DNA from: Sminthopsis crassicaudata | Lineage: Eukaryota | DNA length: 64,000 bases | Direction: 5' to 3' | NCBI RefSeq assembly: GCF_048593235.1 | Contig: NC_133617.1 | Span: 72,872,937-72,936,936 of the forward strand | Shown here: positions 4,285-24,598 of the stretch, one piece after another | Position numbering within the stretch: position 1 is the first letter of the stretch | Layout: every line of letters begins with the position of its first letter | Program-made: the position numbers and the translations under genes | The notes under the pieces: model-generated | The model's database searches: none | Told to the model about the DNA's origin: nothing | The model's input: the letters and a program-made list of their open reading frames with translations, nothing else

Positions 4285-5020
4285 TTTTTTTATTAAAGTT
4301 TTTTATTTACAGAACATATGCATGGATAATTTTTCAGCATTGACTCTTGCAAAACTTTCTGCTCCAAATTTTTCCCCTCCTCCCTACCTCCTCCCCTAGA
4401 TGGTAGGTAGTCCAATACATGTTAAATATGTTAAAATATATTTAAAATCCAATATATGTATACATATTTATATAGTTATCTTGCTGCACAAGAAAAGTCG
4501 GATCTAGAAAGGAAAAAAAACCTGAGAAGGAAAACAAAATGCAAGCAAACATCAAGAGAAAGCATGAAAATGTTATATTGTGATCCATACTCAGTTCCCA
4601 CAGTTCTCTCTCTGGGTGTAGATGGTTCTCTTCATCACAAGATCATTGGAACTGATCTGAATCACCTTGCTGTTGAAAAGAGACATCCATCAGAATTGAT
4701 CCTCATATACTCTTGTTGCCATGTATAATGTATAATGATCTGGTTCTGCTCATTTTACTTAGCATCACTTCATGTAAGTCTCTCCAAGTCTCTCTGAAAT
4801 CATCCTGCTTTCTTATAGAATAATAATATTCCAAACATTCATATACCATAATTTATTCGGCCATTCTCCAATTGATGGGCATCTATTCAATTTCCAGTTT
4901 CTTGCCACTACAATAAGGGCTGCCACAAACATTTTTGCACATGTGGGTCCCGTTTGCTCCTTTAAGACCTCTTTGGGATACAAGCCCAATAGAAACACTG
5001 CTGGATCAAATGGTATGCAC
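4285..5020 (-). mobile_element. 5'-truncated L1 (ORF2 C-terminus and 3' UTR), antisense
   Basis: ORF 4813-5070(-) reads LCIPFDPAVFLLGLYPKE...CPSIGEWPNKLWYMNV, the L1 ORF2 C-terminus. Poly-T at about 4285 is the poly-A tail. Confidence 0.85.
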
Positions 5021-5332
5021 AAAAACTGTCTTGAAGGAAGGAAGAGAAGGAAAAAATATAAAGAATTCACAAGCTTTCATCAGGGAATTATCTCAGAGTT
5101 AGTTTTACCTTAATTATCACCAAAATCCAGAGCTTTGATTAAAAAAAAAAAAAATTGACAAAGAACTATGAAGAAATAATTGACATATCCAAGAACTCCA
5201 GCTGTAATCATTTAAGTCCTCTTAAGAACAAAAAAATGAAAGAAAAAGCTGGAATATGAAATGTAAAAAAGAGAACAAAGCTTGTTCTCAGAATAATATC
5301 TGTGAATTGAACATTTTTTAAAAAGACTTTTA

Positions 5333-7160
5333 CATTCAGTGCTTGCGGATAGGCTGAGCGAATATAACAAAGATGACAATACTCCCCAAACTAATCTATT
5401 TATTTAGTGCTATACCAATCAGACTCCCAAGAAACTATTTTTATGGCCTAGAAAAAATAACAACAAAATTCATATGGAAGAATAAAAAAAGGTCGAGAAT
5501 TGCAAGGGAACTAATGAAAAAAAAGTCAGAGGAAGGTAGTCTAAGTGTACCTGATCTAAAGCTATATTATATAGCAGCAGTCACCAAAACCATTTGGTAC
5601 TGGCTAAGAAATAGAACGGTAGATCAGTGGAACAGATTAGATGCAAAGGACAAAAAAGGGTACATCTATAGCAATCTAATCTTTGACAAACCCAAAGATA
5701 CCAACATTAGGGACAAAAATTCATTATTCAGAAGAAACTGTTGGGAAAACTGGAAATTAGTATGGCAGAAATTAGATATAGATCCACACTTAACACCATA
5801 TACCAAGATAAAATCAAAATGGGTTCATGATTTAGGCATAAAGAATGAGATCATAAGTAGATTAGAGGAACAGAGGATAGTCTACCTCTCAGACCTATGG
5901 AGGAGGAAGGAATTTATGACCAGAGGAGAACGAGAGAGCATTATTGATCACAAAATAGAAGATTTTGATTACATCAAACTAAAAAGTTTCTGTACAAACA
6001 AAACTAATGCAAACAACATTAGAAGGGAAGTAACAAAGTGGGAAAATATTTTTACAGTTAGAGGTTCTGATAAAGGCCTCATTTCTAAAATATATAGAGA
6101 ACTGACTCTAATTTATAAGAAATCAAACCATTCCCCAATTGATAAATGGTCAAAGGATATGAACAGACAATTCTCAGATGATGAAATTGAAACTATATCC
6201 ACTCATATGAAAGAGTGTTCCAAATCACTACTGATCAGAGAAATGCAAATTAAGACAACTCTGAGATACCACTATACACCTGTCAGATTGGCTAAGATGA
6301 CAGGAACAAATAATGATGAATGTTGGAGGGGCTGTGGGAAAACTGGGACACTAATGCATTGTTGGTGGAGTTGTGAAAGAACCCAACCATTCTGGAGAGC
6401 AATTTGGAACTATGCCCAAAACGTTATCAAACTGTGCATACCCTTTGATCCAGCATTGCTACTATTGGGCTTATATCTCAAAGAAATATTAAAGAGGGGA
6501 AAGGGACCTGTATGTGCCAAAATGTTTTTGGCAGCTCTTTTCATAGTGGCTAGAAACTGGAAGATGAATGGATGTCCATCAATTGGAGAATGGTTGGGTA
6601 AATTATGGTATATGAATGTTATGGAATATTATTGCTCTGTAAGAAATGACCAGCAGGATGGATACAGAGAGGTTTGGAGAAATTTATATGAACTGATGCT
6701 GAGTGAAATGAGCAGAACCAGAAGATCACTATACACTTCAACAACAATACTATATGAGGATGTATTCTGATGGAAGTGGATATCTTCAACATAAAGAAGA
6801 TCCAACTCACTTCCAGTTGATCAATGAAGGACAGAAACAACTACACCCAGAGAAGGAACACTGGGAAGGGAATGTAAACTTAACACTACTGTCTACCCAG
6901 GTTACTTATACCTTTGGAATTCAATTCTTAACGTGCAACAAGAAAATGGTATTTACACACATATATTGTATCTAAGTTATACTGTAACACATGTAATATG
7001 TATGGGATTGCCTGTCATCTAGGGGAGGGAGTAGAAGGAGGGAGGGGAAAATTTGGAAAAATGAATACAAGGGATAATGTTATAAAAAAAATTACTCATG
7101 CATATATCTTGTCAAAAAATTTTTTTATAATTTTATAATTATAAAATTAATAAAAAAAAA
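5333..7160 (+). mobile_element. Young 5'-truncated L1, copy A
   Basis: Uninterrupted 465-aa ORF2 C-terminal fragment (5373-6770), 3' UTR and A tail. Candidate TSD aaaaagactttta (5320-5332) / aaaaaaactttta (7156-7168) at a TT|AAAA site. Confidence 0.96.
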
Positions 7161-8468
7161 AACTTTTATAGGATGACCTGTTTCAGTGAGTCCTTCACAG
7201 ATAACCAGATATAAACTGGGTTTTGAGGTATACATTTATTAAAAATAAAACTAATGATGTGTAAATCCAATAGCCTTTCAAGCCTATAAAGAAATGCAGT
7301 GTTGTGTGTATTAAGAAAAAGATTGAAGTGTTTCTTAGAATTACTGCCTTGCCTATTGGGGGGGGGGGAGGGCACCAAGGAGAATAATTATCATTAATCC
7401 CAGTAATGGTGATCAGACTCTTGTCCTAAAGGATAAAAGAAGGGAGAAATTAGTGTTTTTTGGAATAAAGCACTACATATAGTGTTACTTCAAACTATTG
7501 CCAAGGAACTCAAACAAAAAAAAAAAAAAAAATGTTGGATAAGGTGTAGAGATATTGTGATTAGATTGTTTTAAAGCAAAATAAGTATAGGCTGACCATT
7601 AAAAAAAAAAAAAAAAAAAAAAACAGGTCTGGGGGATTTGACACATGGTTTTGGAAGGAAGGGTTGTATTTTGAAGGAGATGACTGGGACAGTCATTTCA
7701 AGACAACAAGCTACAATTAACTAGTACTTTGTTTGTTTTGTTTTGTTTTAACAGATTATTCAGCAGGATTTGTTAAGGGGAAAAACATTAAACAATAATA
7801 TCCTTGAATTATAATGACTTTTTCCTGCGTGGACTTAGGCCAAACACTTTTGAGTGATTACAGATCTCATTTATGAGGCCTTGAAATGTTCTGGGGCTAG
7901 ATGTAATCAGTACCACATCTGCAGCAAAAGGGACCATGTGGAGGTCCTCTTTTGAGAAGCCCTCTTTGACTTGGCCTTGCTCAGGATATTGTTAATGATA
8001 TTGGGAAACACCGGGAGTGAGCTTGTCTCCTTTGTTTTATTCCTTGATTGTTATCAGCAATTAGCTTGAAAGTAGAATGACAATTAGATACCGTTCATAG
8101 AGCTGGCCTATGAGTTTATACATTTTGGACAGAAATAATAAGCTGGGCTCAGATTTGAAGTGGAATAAGAAAGCAAAGTGGATTTTTTTTTTTTAAACTA
8201 GACCTGTAATTTCATTTGTGTAGGAAACCCAGAAAGAATCTTTTCCCTACCAATACAAATTGTTACCTGCTCTGCAATTTAGTCATCAAGAGTTTCCTGG
8301 GACACTAGGGAGATTAGTGATTTGCCCAGTCTCACAGCCAATATAGGTGGTCAAATTTGCCCCCATGATGGTTTTACTCCACAGTCACATCTTTGGTAAA
8401 TTTCACAGTTTATTTAATGACGGCCCCCACCTTTTGAAACAAAGGTCCTTCTTAAAACCAAAAGTGTA

Positions 8469-11205
8469 TTTACATGTGAATTCTACCAAACATTTAAAGA
8501 ACAATTAGCCCCAATGCTATATAAACTATTTGAAAAAATAGGGAATGAAGGAGTCCTACCAAACTCCTTTTATGACATAGACATGGTACTGATACCTAAA
8601 CCAGGTCGATCGAAAACTGAGAAAGAAAATTATAGACCAATTTCCTTAATGAATATTGATGCTAAAATCTTAAATAAGACATTAGCAAAAAGACTTCAGA
8701 AAATCATCCCCAGGATAATACACTATGATCAAGTAGGATTCATACCAGGAATGCAGAGCTGGTTTAATATTAGGAAAACTATTAGTATAATTGACCATAT
8801 TAATAATCAAATTAATAAAAACCATATGATCATCTCAATAGATGCAGAAAAAGCATTTGACAAAATCCAACATCCATTCCTACTAAAAACTCTTGAGAGT
8901 ATAGGAATAAATGGATTATTCCTTAGAATAATCAGGAGCATATATTTAAGACCATCAGTAAGCATAATATGCAATAGAAATAAACTGCAACCTTTCCCAG
9001 TAAGATCAGGAGTGAAACAAGGTTGCCCACTATCACCATTACTATTCAATATAGTACTAGAAACGCTAGCCTCAGCAATAAGAGCCGAGAAAGAGATTCA
9101 AGGAATTAGAGTAGGAAATGAGGAAATCAAACTATCACTCTTTGCAGATGGCATGATGGTATACTTAGAGAACCCCAAAGACTCTGCTAAAAAGCTATTA
9201 GAAATAATTCAGAATTTTAGCAAAGTGGCAGGATACAAAATAAATCCACATGAATCCTCAGCATTCTTATATATCACCAACAAAATGCAACAGCAAGAGA
9301 TACAAAGAGAAATTCCATTCCAAACAAATGTTGAGAGTATAAAGTATTTGGGAATCCATCTACCAAAGAATAGTCCGGAATTATATGAGAAAAATTACAA
9401 AACACTTGCTACAAAAATAAAGTCAGATTTAAATAATTGGAAAGACATTCAGTGCTCTTGGATAGGCCGAGCGAATATAATAAAGATGACAATACTCCCC
9501 AAACTAATCTATTTATTTAGTGCTATACCAATCAGACTCCCAAGAAACTATTTTTATGGCCTAGAAAAAATAACAACAAAATTCATATGGAAGAATAAAA
9601 AAAGGTCGAGAATTGCAAGGGAACTAATGAAAAAAAAGTCAGAGGAAGGTAGTCTAAGTGTACCTGATCTAAAGCTATATTATATAGCAGCAGTCACCAA
9701 AACCATTTGGTACTGGCTAAGAAATAGAACGGTAGATCAGTGGAACAGATTAGATGCAAAGGACAAAAAAGGGTACATCTATAGCAATCTAATCTTTGAC
9801 AAACCCAAAGATACCAACATTAGGGACAAAAATTCATTATTCAGAAGAAACTGTTGGGAAAACTGGAAATTAGTATGGCAGAAATTAGATATAGATCCAC
9901 ACTTAACACCATATACCAAGATAAAATCAAAATGAGTTCATGATTTAGGCATAAAGAATGAGATCATAAGTAGATTAGAGGAACAGAGGATAGTCTACCT
10001 CTCAGACCTATGGAGGAGGAAGGAATTTATGACCAGAGGAGAACTAGAGAGCATTATTGATCACAAAATAGAAGATTTTGATTACATCAAACTAAAAGGT
10101 TTCTGTACAAACAAAACTAATGCAAACAACATTAGAAGGGAAGTAACAAAGTGGGAAAATATTTTTACAGTTAGAGGTTCTGATAAAGGCCTCATTTCTA
10201 AAATATATAGAGAACTGACTCTAATTTATAAGAAATCAAACCATTCCCCAATTGATAAATGGTCAAAGGATATGAACAGACAATTCTCAGATGATGAAAT
10301 TGAAACTATATCCACTCATATGAAAGAGTGTTCCAAATCACTACTGATCAGAGAAATGCAAATTAAGACAACTCTGAGATACCACTACACACCTGTCAGA
10401 TTGGCTAAGATGACAGGAACAAATAATGATGAATGTTGGAGGGGATGTGGGAAAACTGGGACACTAATGCATTGTTGGTGGAGTTGTGAAAGAATCCAGC
10501 CATTCTGGAGAGCAATTTGGAACTATGTCCAAAAAGTTATCAAACTGTGCATACCCTTTGACCCAGCATTGCTGTTATTGGGATTATATCCCAAAGAAAT
10601 ACTAAAGAGTGGAAAGGGACCTGTATGTGCCAAAATGTTTGTGGCAGCTCTTTTTGTTGTAGCTAAAAACTGGAAGTTGAATGGATGTCTATCAATTGCA
10701 GAATGGTTGGGTAAATTATGGTATATGAAGGTTATGGAATATTATTTCTCTGTAAGAAATGACCAGCAGGAGGAATACAGAGAGGCTTGGAGAGACTTAC
10801 ATCAACTGATGCTGAGTGAAATGAGCAGAACCAGAAGATCACTATACACTTCAACAACAATACTGTATGAGGATGTATTCTGATGGAGGTGGAAATCTTC
10901 AACATAAAGAAGATCCAACTCACTTCCAGTTGATCAATAATGGACAGAGGTAGCTACACCCAGAGAAGGAACACTGGGAATTGAATGTAAAATATTAGCA
11001 CTACTGTCTATCTACCCAGGTTACTTATACCTTCGGAATTCAATTCTTAACGTGCAACAAGAAAATTGGATTTACACACATATATTGTATCTAAGTTATA
11101 CTGTAACACATGTAAAATGTATGGGATTGCCTGTCATTGGGGGGAGGGAGTGGAAGGAGGGAGGGGATAATTTGGAAAAATGAATAAAAAAAAAAATTTA
11201 AAAAA
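8469..11205 (+). mobile_element. Young 5'-truncated L1, copy B (RT domain to 3' end, one nonsense codon)
   Basis: ORF2 with the RT motifs [13 protein letters not shown] and LFADGM (Gly in place of the second catalytic Asp of the usual FADD). A TGG>TGA stop at 9933-9935 splits ORFs 8514-9935 and 10029-10883, which are in the same frame. Candidate TSD aaaaccaaaagtgta (8454-8468) / aaaactcaaaagtgta (11206-11221). Confidence 0.97.
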
Positions 11206-11231
11206 AAAACTCAAAAGTGTAAGTGCTTGTA

Positions 11232-11252
11232 TGTGTGTGTGTGTGTGTGTGT
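11232..11252. repeat. (TG)n microsatellite
   Basis: About 10 TG units directly visible. Confidence 0.95.
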
Positions 11253-11419
11253 TGTGTTGTATGGCTCAAATCAGAGTTTTATTCCTCAAAGGATTCGAGT
11301 TGATTTCTCAAAAGACAGTAAGAAAGCACTTGGTAGTTGTAAGTGAGCTTCAAAATATATGAAGGAAGAATTACATGCAAGGCACATGTGAAGGAATGGC
11401 CTTAAAGGATTTGAAATTA

Positions 11420-13940: not shown

Positions 13941-14299
13941 CACAAGCATTTTACAGATGAGGAAACTGAGGCGAGTTAAGGGATTTTCGCAGGGTCACAC
14001 AAACAGTAAATGTCCGAGGCTCCACGTGAGCTCCGGTCTCCCGGACACTTCCCCTTTTTCCGATGAGGAGCCGGGCTCACGGGGCGAGTGCTCCGTTCTC
14101 CATTTCCCGCTCTCCCCTGCACAGCGCCTCCTCCACAGGGCCTGACCTCGCTGCTCCGGGAAGTGGGGACACTGAGTTCTGGGGCAGAACGAGACCAGAA
14201 AGTGCTTCAAGAAGATTCATGGCCCTGTCGCTCCGCCCATTCTTCTCCTCTCGCCGAGTGAGAACGCCAGGGACCGCCCACCTCATCTAGAGGAAATAT

Positions 14300-14640
14300 C
14301 CCTAGCCCGCCCCCTCCCCTCCAAGTCCCCACCTTTTCCGCCTTCTTTCCGTCGACCAATCACCGTCATCTCCTCCAGGATCCAGCCAATCAACGCTGAG
14401 CACCGGAAGCCTGGCGCTACTAATGGACCGGCGGCCGTCACACTCCCAATAAGAAGGCGCTACAGCAGCCACCAATGAATGAGCTTGTTGCAGGAGGCCA
14501 ATGGGATGCGAGCTCTCGGCTGCCCAGCTAGGGAGGGCCTGTCAGTCAGAGGGTCCGGTTGCGGCTGCCGCTGCTGCGGCTGAGAGAAAGCGAGCTCCGG
14601 GGCCGGAGTCCGAAGTCCGGGCTGAATATCGCGCTGACAG
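14300..14640 (+). promoter_or_regulatory. TYK2: TYK2 CpG-island promoter and non-coding first exon
   Basis: GC box near 14305; CCAAT boxes at 14356, 14386, 14446, 14472 and 14498; ETS site CCGGAAG at 14403; strong donor CAG|GTGAGC at 14640/14641. A second non-coding exon at about 15588-15724 is plausible but unproven. Confidence 0.75.
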
Positions 14641-14799
14641 GTGAGCCCGGGTCCAGGCCCGGGGCCGGGGAGCAGCGCAGCCCTGGAAGCGGTCTGGGAG
14701 TCCGGCGGGATTGGTGTGTGGGAGCCCCGGGGAGTGCGGGGCCCCGGGAAGTGGGGGCTGCGTGCGGGCGCTTCTGCGCTCCTCCGGCTAGCACCAGGG

Positions 14800-15280
14800 G
14801 CAGTGCCCGGGAGGAGGCAGCGCCTGGGAGGGGGGCATGGGAGGAGGCAGTGCCCGGGAGGGGGGCAGCGCCCGGGAGGGGGGCAGCGCCCGGGAGGAGG
14901 CAGCGCCCGGGAGGGGGGCAGCGCCCGGGAGGGGGGCAGCGCCCGGGAGGGGGGCAGCGCCCGGGAGGGGGGCAGCGCCCGGGAGGAGGCAGTGCTCGGG
15001 AAGGGGGCAGCGCCCGGGAGGAGGCAGTGCTCGGGAAGGGGGCAGCGCCCGGGAGGAGGCAGTGCTCGGGAGGGGGGCAGCGCCCGGGAGGAGGCAGTGC
15101 TCGGGAGGGGGGCAGTGCCCGGGAGGAGGCAGCGCCTGGGAGGGGGGCATGGGAGGAGGCAGTGCCCGGGAGGGGGGCAGCGCCCGGGAGGGGGGCAGCG
15201 CCCGGGAGGAGGCAGCGCCCGGGAGGGGGGCAGCTCCCGGGAGGGGGGCAGCGCCCGGGAGGGGGGCAGTGCCTGGGGGG
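14800..15280 (+). repeat. G-rich 17/18-bp minisatellite (VNTR), 28 units, in TYK2 intron 1
   Basis: Units GCAGCGCCCGGGAGGGGG (18 bp) and GCAGCGCCCGGGAGGAG (17 bp) plus variants, parsed by hand. Confidence 0.98.
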
Positions 15281-16053
15281 CGCCCACAGGAAAGATGGCC
15301 AGGGTGGGCAGTGACTGGAGTGCGGTGGGGGTGATCAGTAAGAGGAATGGCAGTGCCAGGGTGAGCTCCGAGGGGAACAGCGTCGGGGGAAGCTGAGGCA
15401 AGGAGGCACCGAAGCGGACAGCGGGACCGTGCGTGGTGGGGGGGCAGCGGGGGCTGTAGGTGGGCCTTTTGGAGAAGGGAAGGAGAACGGGTGAGGGTAT
15501 GGATGGGCTGCAGGAGGGGACTGCAGCGCCGCGGGGGCTGGGAAGCATCGCCAGCGAGGCCTGTAGTTTCTCGGTGTTGCCCCCCAGGAGTCTGCACTGC
15601 AGCTGCCCTCACTTTTGGCCCCAGTTCCCCCCAAACTGCGCACCTCCCCCACCTTCAGCAAGCTTCCATTAAGCGCTTCCTGCGGACAAGGAGCGGGCCG
15701 TATCCCCGCCTCTGTGGTCCTTGGGTGGGTAGTGACGGACCGTGTTGCTCCTTTCCTGCGGTCCGACTTCCAGGAGGGACTCTGGCCCTCCGCAGAGTTA
15801 ACGCTTTTCCCAGCCTTGTTATACTTGTTTCCAGATGACTAAGATTTATTCTGTATCATGTGCCCAGTAAGTGTCAGCGCCGAAACTTAGGCCAGAGTCC
15901 TCAGAGCCCAAGCCCAGGCTCTTTCCGTGAGTCTATGAAAGGCTTTCCATTTGTTCTCTTCCTTTTTCTCCTGACTCCTGGACTAGGACAACTTGGATGC
16001 AGAGAGCTTTGGAGTGAGGCCTAAAGAGCCCCTTCAGTTGGCCGGAGATCAAG

Positions 16054-24598
<8,545 letters not shown>

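What the first reader, a model, noticed from the sequence alone, without database searches (positions are those of the whole stretch)
5333..11205. Apparent ~1-kb gene-conversion tract between two neighbouring, independently inserted L1s
L1 copies A (5333-7160) and B (8469-11205) align at an offset of 4113 bp. Each has its own TSD and a different 3' end, so they are separate insertions. Within A 5370-6380 / B 9483-10493 I count only 5 mismatches in about 1010 bp (about 99.5% identity), and both carry an extra AAA codon (WKNKKRSR) absent from the older L1 near 38420 (KNKRSR). Outside that tract identity drops sharply on both sides: about 5 mismatches in the first 40 bp of A, and about 30 in the 330 bp after 6381 (about 91%), with indels in the 3' UTRs. 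A high-identity block with both ends inside a longer, more diverged homology is the expected signature of ectopic gene conversion between direct repeats 4 kb apart. Such a pair could also delete the intervening ~4.1 kb by unequal recombination, upstream of TYK2.
Basis: partly seen in the sequence, partly recalled or inferred. Interest (0 to 1): 0.7.

Follow-up and report, generated by a model that had tools for sequence, protein, structure and literature searches.

The report
Recombination patch between neighbouring L1 copies
Two dead LINE-1 copies 4 kb apart upstream of the marsupial TYK2 gene share a 1-kb stretch that is nearly identical while the rest differs by about 8%. One copy was most likely partly overwritten by the other, a known kind of repeat-to-repeat copying that could not be proven here.

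Summary
L1 copy A (5333-7155) and copy B (8469-11186) align at offset 4113. Identity is 99.5% over A 5369-6381 (5 differences in 1013 columns), 86% in A's first 37 bp and 92.3% over 6382-7067. The block scores LLR 37.2, against a maximum of 13.2 in 1000 permutations.

Both block ends lie inside ORF2, and the 3' end is 386 nt before the stop. The step is therefore not a coding/UTR boundary. Each copy has its own target-site duplication, A-rich tail and 3' end, so they are separate insertions.

- All five 5'-flank differences are private to A, and they include a stop codon.
- Both 3'UTR indels are deletions in A.
- A-private coding changes run 12 non-synonymous to 2-3 synonymous, against 9:8 for B.
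- The patch ends 37 bp from the edge of homology.

So A looks like an older insertion whose interior was replaced by young B-type sequence, probably from B (confidence about 0.58).

A mosaic source element (about 0.25) and an assembly artefact (about 0.07) remain open. Gene conversion between neighbouring repeats is well known, so interest is low.

The parts
5320..5332 (+). 5' target-site duplication of L1 copy A, preceded by a T-run/A-run junction that fits an L1 endonuclease site
   Evidence: 13-mer repeated at 7156-7168 with one mismatch
5333..5368 (+). 5' flank of the patch in copy A. It has five differences from B, all private to A, including an in-frame stop at 5355-5357 and changes in the conserved CSWIGR stretch of ORF2
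5369..6381 (+). High-identity patch in copy A (99.5% to B 9482-10494). ORF2 stays open throughout and the patch ends just after the CCHC zinc knuckle
6382..7067 (+). 3' flank of the patch in copy A: the last 129 ORF2 codons (stop at 6768-6770) plus the 3'UTR. It is 92.3% identical to B and has two A-private deletions near 6879 and 6888
7068..7168 (+). A's canonical 3'UTR end (absent from B, present in older fragment O4), an 11-A tail at 7152-7162, and the 3' TSD at 7156-7168
8454..8468 (+). 5' target-site duplication of L1 copy B
8469..9481 (+). B-only upstream part of ORF2 (reverse-transcriptase region). It is open, and its catalytic box reads FADG at 9141-9152
9482..10494 (+). Counterpart of the patch in copy B, the presumed donor. 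It has one in-frame stop at 9933-9935
10495..11221 (+). B's 3' flank: ORF2 end (stop 10881-10883), a shortened 3'UTR ending about 11186, an A-rich tail, and the 3' TSD at 11206-11221
43195..43688 (-). Older L1 3' fragment O1, used as a comparator. It groups with B, not A, in the ORF2 C-terminal region
38469..38699 (-). Older L1 3'UTR fragment O4, used as a comparator. It carries the full-length 3' end seen in A

Best explanation
Copy A is an older, 5'-truncated L1 insertion of a slightly different 3'-end type. Copy B is a much younger L1 that landed 1.3 kb downstream on the same strand. A break or nick inside A was then repaired by homologous recombination using young B-type sequence as template, most likely B itself. 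This non-allelic gene conversion was non-reciprocal. It replaced about 1 kb of A's interior (5369 to somewhere in 6333-6381) and left A's outer 37 bp and its last 0.7 kb untouched. What is shown: the patch, its significance, the independent insertions, and the A-private damage confined to the flanks. What is inferred: the direction (B-type into A), B as the donor, and the DNA-level mechanism.
For: (1) The patch is significant, with both ends inside homology and inside ORF2. (2) A-private changes are 25 in 725 flank bp against 3 in 1013 patch bp (p = 2e-7). (3) All five 5'-flank differences are A-private by outgroup, and they include a stop codon and changes in a motif conserved across mammals. 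Three or more mutational events in 37 bp has probability 1e-4 if A were as young as the patch, and 0.07-0.14 at 2.5-3.5% decay. (4) Both UTR indels are deletions in A. (5) A-derived coding changes run 12 N to 2-3 S, against 9:8 for B-derived ones, so A's branch looks neutral and B's looks selected. (6) A's TSD has one mismatch. (7) The patch stops 37 bp short of the end of homology, as expected if a homologous anchor is needed. This would be a coincidence for a truncated copy of a mosaic source. (8) B is open across 814 codons except for one stop, so it is a coherent young element. (9) The patch differences split 2 B-private and 2-3 A-private, as expected after one recent event. (10) Non-allelic conversion between repeats is reported to be elevated within 10 kb (review PMC6598467).
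Against: No third sequence covers both patch and flank, so the incongruence cannot be shown on a tree. The N:S contrast is weak (two-sided p = 0.06-0.15). A's branch in 6594-6867 (0.023) is shorter than that of older fragment O1 (0.043), although A branches earlier. So A is not heavily decayed, and more than one 3'-end type was present, which is the setting in which mosaic source elements arise. Conversion between sequences only about 92% alike is inefficient (established knowledge). No reads or orthologous loci were examined.
Confidence: 0.58

Rival explanations
1. The mosaic arose in the source or at insertion. A is itself a young insertion, copied from a recombinant L1 master element or made by reverse-transcriptase template switching between two L1 RNAs. 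That source already combined a B-like interior with an A-type 3' end. Nothing happened at this locus after insertion.
For: Recombinant L1 families are well documented in mouse and rat, with breakpoints inside ORF2 (PMC3600994). The window holds at least three 3'-end types (A, B, O1/O4), and A's own branch is short. Derived changes in the 3' flank are about equal on the two branches, 20 A and 24 B. ORF2 stays open through A's 3' flank.
Against: A's 5' flank carries a stop codon and substitutions in a conserved motif, which an autonomous source could not have. As post-insertion hits in a young copy they have probability about 1e-4. The model needs two breakpoints, one of them by chance 37 bp from the truncation point. 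It also needs two young insertions 1.3 kb apart in a species reported to have few open L1 copies (PMC5010896). A-private UTR deletions and the N-heavy changes also count against it.
Confidence: 0.25
2. Assembly, read-correction or polishing artefact. A's true interior is as diverged as its flanks, and the assembler or polisher overwrote it with sequence from young L1 reads.
For: Logan contigs of organism-A runs hold only 0.81-0.88 of the sampled words of 5300-11290.
Against: Runs from three studies hold most of the words. The patch has 2-3 A-private differences from B, so it is not a plain copy of B. A recent dunnart assembly was built from long Nanopore reads with hifiasm (PMC13408496). Such reads would span both copies, though which assembly the window comes from is unknown.
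Confidence: 0.07
3. Conversion at this locus but from a different donor: another young B-type L1 elsewhere in the genome, or an L1 cDNA or RNA used as repair template, with B only a bystander. This is a variant of the best explanation and is counted within its confidence.
For: B has two private changes in the patch, one of them a stop, that A lacks. cDNA-mediated replacement is known for yeast Ty and Tf2 (PMC6598467).
Against: Proximity and same orientation favour B. The 0.5% difference fits post-event mutation in both copies.
Confidence: 0.15

Closest known systems
Non-allelic gene conversion between dispersed retroelements (Alu: Kass 1995, Roy 2000, Aleshin and Zhi 2010; Y-chromosome LTRs: Trombetta 2016; all as reviewed in PMC6598467)
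   Same: An older element is partly overwritten by sequence of a younger subfamily. The result is a mosaic of diagnostic sites, with higher rates reported for copies less than 10 kb apart.
   Different: Here the elements are marsupial L1 fragments and the patch is about 1 kb. The classic proof, an unconverted orthologue in a sister species, is missing.
Recombinant (mosaic) L1 families of mouse and rat, for example L1Md Tf and Gf (PMC3600994)
   Same: There are breakpoints inside ORF2 between L1 types, with sharply different relatedness on either side.
   Different: Those mosaics are shared by whole families of copies and keep intact reading frames. Here only one copy is known, and its flank carries a stop codon.
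L1-L1 unequal homologous recombination causing deletions (Burwinkel and Kilimann 1998, cited in PMC3600994)
   Same: Same-orientation L1 copies a few kb apart act as a recombination substrate.
   Different: No deletion or duplication is seen here, only a non-reciprocal patch.

Membership tests
Non-allelic (ectopic) gene conversion tract | Two paralogous sequences of independent origin at separate sites | tested here: met
   Separate TSDs, tails and 3' ends; no homology in the spacer or outer flanks
Non-allelic (ectopic) gene conversion tract | Contiguous block of significantly raised identity bounded on both sides by more diverged homology | tested here: met
   LLR 37.2 against a permutation maximum of 13.2; 99.5% against 86% and 92.3%
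Non-allelic (ectopic) gene conversion tract | Phylogenetic incongruence between tract and flanks, judged against third sequences | tested here: inconclusive
   In the flank B groups with O1 rather than A (UFBoot 98, AU p = 0.014), but no third copy of that clade covers the tract
Non-allelic (ectopic) gene conversion tract | Unconverted state at the orthologous locus of another species or individual | not testable with these tools
Recombinant L1 subfamily (source-level mosaic) | Many copies genome-wide sharing the same breakpoints | not testable with these tools
Recombinant L1 subfamily (source-level mosaic) | Coding capacity intact across the recombinant parts in a young copy | tested here: not met
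   There is a stop at 5355-5357 and changes in the conserved CSWIGR motif in A's 5' flank; the 3' flank ORF is open
L1 target-primed reverse transcription insertion (each copy) | 5' truncation, A-rich tail, TSD, T-rich/A-rich target | tested here: met

The most novel reading that the evidence does not exclude
The patch was not copied from chromosomal B. It was templated by an L1 transcript or cDNA of the same burst that produced B, so that a retrotransposition intermediate repaired a break in an old resident L1. This would be a mammalian counterpart of the cDNA-mediated replacement known for yeast Ty and Tf2. In a lineage with waning L1 activity it would give young L1 sequence a second way to spread.
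Probability: 0.07. Interest if true: 0.55.

Novelty: new member of a known kind. Interest (0 to 1): 0.25.

Why it matters
If it is local conversion, this is a clean, datable marsupial example of repeat-to-repeat copying. It restored a 465-codon open frame in a dead L1 fragment 7-9 kb upstream of the TYK2 CpG island. It also shows that divergence-based dating of single L1 copies can be wrong by an order of magnitude within one element. It bears slightly on how L1 decayed in dasyurids (PMC5010896). It does not change any general view, because both conversion between nearby repeats and mosaic L1 families are established.

Tried and rejected
- **Coding/UTR boundary.** Rejected as the cause of the identity step: the ORF2 stop is at 6768-6770, 386 nt beyond the boundary.
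- **Tandem segmental duplication.** Rejected: the spacer and outer flanks have no second copy.
- **Twin priming with the inverted L1 at 4591-5021.** Rejected: that piece is only 78% identical and overlaps A's own coordinates.
- **Reads.** Searches used 6183-6767 beside them. Later work on those letters was local scripting only.
- **Protein search.** The search with 6183-6767 found no copy above 80% identity; the best named hit was Sarcophilus at 78%.
- **Metagenome scan.** Blank.
- **The look-up of encoding contigs.** Closed.
- **Earlier scan notes.** They gave the species name but no L1 subfamily data.
- **CpG decay count.** Too few sites to be useful.
- **Single-lineage ladder model.** It fits only loosely, because A branches before O1 yet has the shorter branch.
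Full report
**Observation.** Identity at offset 4113 is 48-50 of 50 in every 50-bp bin from 5350 to 6399. It then falls to 43-50 of 50 up to about 6850, and the register is lost after small indels. BLAST joins A 5332-7091 to B 9445-11209 at 95.8%.

A gapped alignment gives these counts:

| Segment (A coordinates) | Differences | Identity |
|---|---|---|
| 5333-5368 | 5 in 37 bp | 86% |
| 5369-6381 | 5 in 1013 columns (at 5822, 5932, 5985, 6275, 6332) | 99.5% |
| 6382-6767 | 30 in 386 | 92.2% |
| 6768-7067 | 23 events in 302, including a 2-bp and a 4-bp indel | 92.4% |

The best two-breakpoint model picks 5369-6381, with a log-likelihood ratio of 37.2. Permutations gave a mean of 5.0 and a maximum of 13.2 in 1000 runs. 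The longest perfect run is 453 bp, against a maximum of 334 in 10000 permutations.

**Anatomy.** Both copies are 5'-truncated L1 fragments on the + strand.
- Copy A has a 13-nt TSD at 5320-5332 and 7156-7168 (12 of 13 match), an 11-A tail and a T-run/A-run target.
- Copy B has a TSD at 8454-8468 and 11206-11221, with a perfect 10-mer core.
- B's L1 sequence stops about 90 nt earlier than A's. The older fragment O4 (38469-38699, minus strand) carries the long end, so A's end is the canonical one.
- Nothing in the spacer or outer flanks is duplicated.

**Position in ORF2.** In the ORF2 frame, A's native stop is at 6768-6770 and B's at 10881-10883. The 3' edge of the patch therefore lies inside ORF2, just after the CCHC zinc knuckle and 386 nt before the stop. 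A change of selective constraint cannot explain the step in identity.
- B reads open over 814 codons apart from one stop at 9933-9935, and its catalytic box reads FADG at 9141-9152.
- A has one stop at 5355-5357, in its 5' flank, and is otherwise open to the native stop.

**Polarity of the differences.**
- The older L1 at 38286-38446 matches B at all five 5'-flank differences. All five are therefore private to A. They include the stop and changes in the CSWIGR stretch, which I know to be conserved between eutherian and marsupial ORF2.
- In 6382-7067 the in-window outgroups assign 20 differences to A's branch, 24 to B's and 8 as ambiguous. Both indels are deletions in A.
- By codon, A-derived changes are 12 non-synonymous and 2-3 synonymous. 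B-derived changes are 9 and 8. The direction fits neutral decay on A's branch and purifying selection on B's, but the contrast is weak (Fisher two-sided p = 0.06-0.15).
- Inside the patch, 2 differences are B-private and 2-3 are A-private.
- A-private changes are 25 in 725 flank bp against 3 in 1013 patch bp (p = 2e-7).
- If the patch had decayed like A's flanks, its frame would stay open only 14-22% of the time.

**A small tree.** For 6594-6867 the maximum-likelihood tree groups B with the older fragment O1 (43195-43688, minus strand), with support 98. The AU test rejects A and B as sisters (p = 0.014). So in the flank A is not even B's nearest relative in this window, while in the patch the two are 99.5% identical.

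A's own branch (0.023) is shorter than O1's (0.043). A is thus an early-branching type with only moderate decay. The 3'UTR patterns indicate a third type formed by O1 and O4. Several L1 3'-end types therefore existed, which keeps a source-level mosaic plausible.

**Attempts to reach other copies.**
- Runs of organism A hold 0.81-0.88 of the sampled words of 5300-11290. Two related organisms hold about 0.3.
- A protein search with 6183-6767 found nothing above 80% identity. The best named hit was Sarcophilus harrisii at 78%.
- Earlier scan notes name the genome as the fat-tailed dunnart. I did not verify this beyond the dasyurid affinity of the L1.
- TYK2 is confirmed downstream on the + strand: a kinase exon at 23481-23639 matches TYK2 at E = 2e-27, against 1e-17 for JAK2.

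**Weighing the explanations.** A recombination event is certain. The open question is where it happened.

Local conversion of an older A by young B-type sequence explains several things together:
- damage confined to both flanks of A;
- a patch that ends 37 bp from the edge of homology;
- a same-strand B-type copy 4.1 kb away;
- the even split of the few patch differences.

A mosaic source or template switch needs more. It requires two breakpoints, one of them by chance next to the truncation point. It also requires a source with a stop codon, or three mutational events in 37 bp of a very young copy (probability about 1e-4). It further needs two young insertions 1.3 kb apart in a species where few open L1 sequences were found (PMC5010896).

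Against conversion: the flanks are only about 92% alike, the selection contrast is not significant, and A's branch is short.

I put conversion at this locus at about 0.58, with B as donor in roughly two thirds of that. The mosaic source or template switch gets about 0.25 and an assembly artefact about 0.07. A recent dunnart assembly used long Nanopore reads (PMC13408496), but which assembly this window comes from is unknown.

**Comparison with what is known.** Non-allelic conversion between retroelements, with higher rates within 10 kb, is reviewed in PMC6598467. Recombinant L1 families, and the three proposed mechanisms for them, are described in PMC3600994. This case is a new instance of a known kind.

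Noticed in passing
window 8442-10883: Copy B keeps ORF2 open over about 814 codons with a single stop (9933-9935), and its reverse-transcriptase box reads FADG at 9141-9152. The older L1 at 37834 reads FADD. A copy this well preserved is notable in a dasyurid, where L1 was reported as largely degraded (PMC5010896).
   Followed up: partly
window 5373-6770: The patch leaves copy A with a 465-codon open frame from an ATG to the native ORF2 stop, covering the ORF2 C-terminal third. No expression evidence was sought.
   Followed up: no
window 4302-5021 (minus strand): An older L1 3' fragment lies inverted just upstream of A. It forms a roughly 430-bp inverted repeat (78% identity) with A 6433-6867 and with B 10546-10984.
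   Followed up: partly
window 43195-43688 and 38469-38699 (both minus strand): These two older L1 3' fragments share six 3'UTR states and a 4-bp gap that both A and B lack. They suggest a third 3'-end type. O4 has very few private changes.
   Followed up: partly
window 37752-39799: An older plus-strand L1 is interrupted at about 38469-38699 by the minus-strand fragment O4. This is a nested insertion.
   Followed up: no
window 11232-11252: A short (TG)n microsatellite starts 10 bp after B's 3' TSD.
   Followed up: no
window 14000-15500 and 21522-23900: There is a CpG-island-like stretch with GC of 0.68-0.75. TYK2 pseudokinase and kinase exons lie on the + strand, so the L1 pair sits about 3-9 kb upstream of the island.
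   Followed up: partly
   Followed up: no
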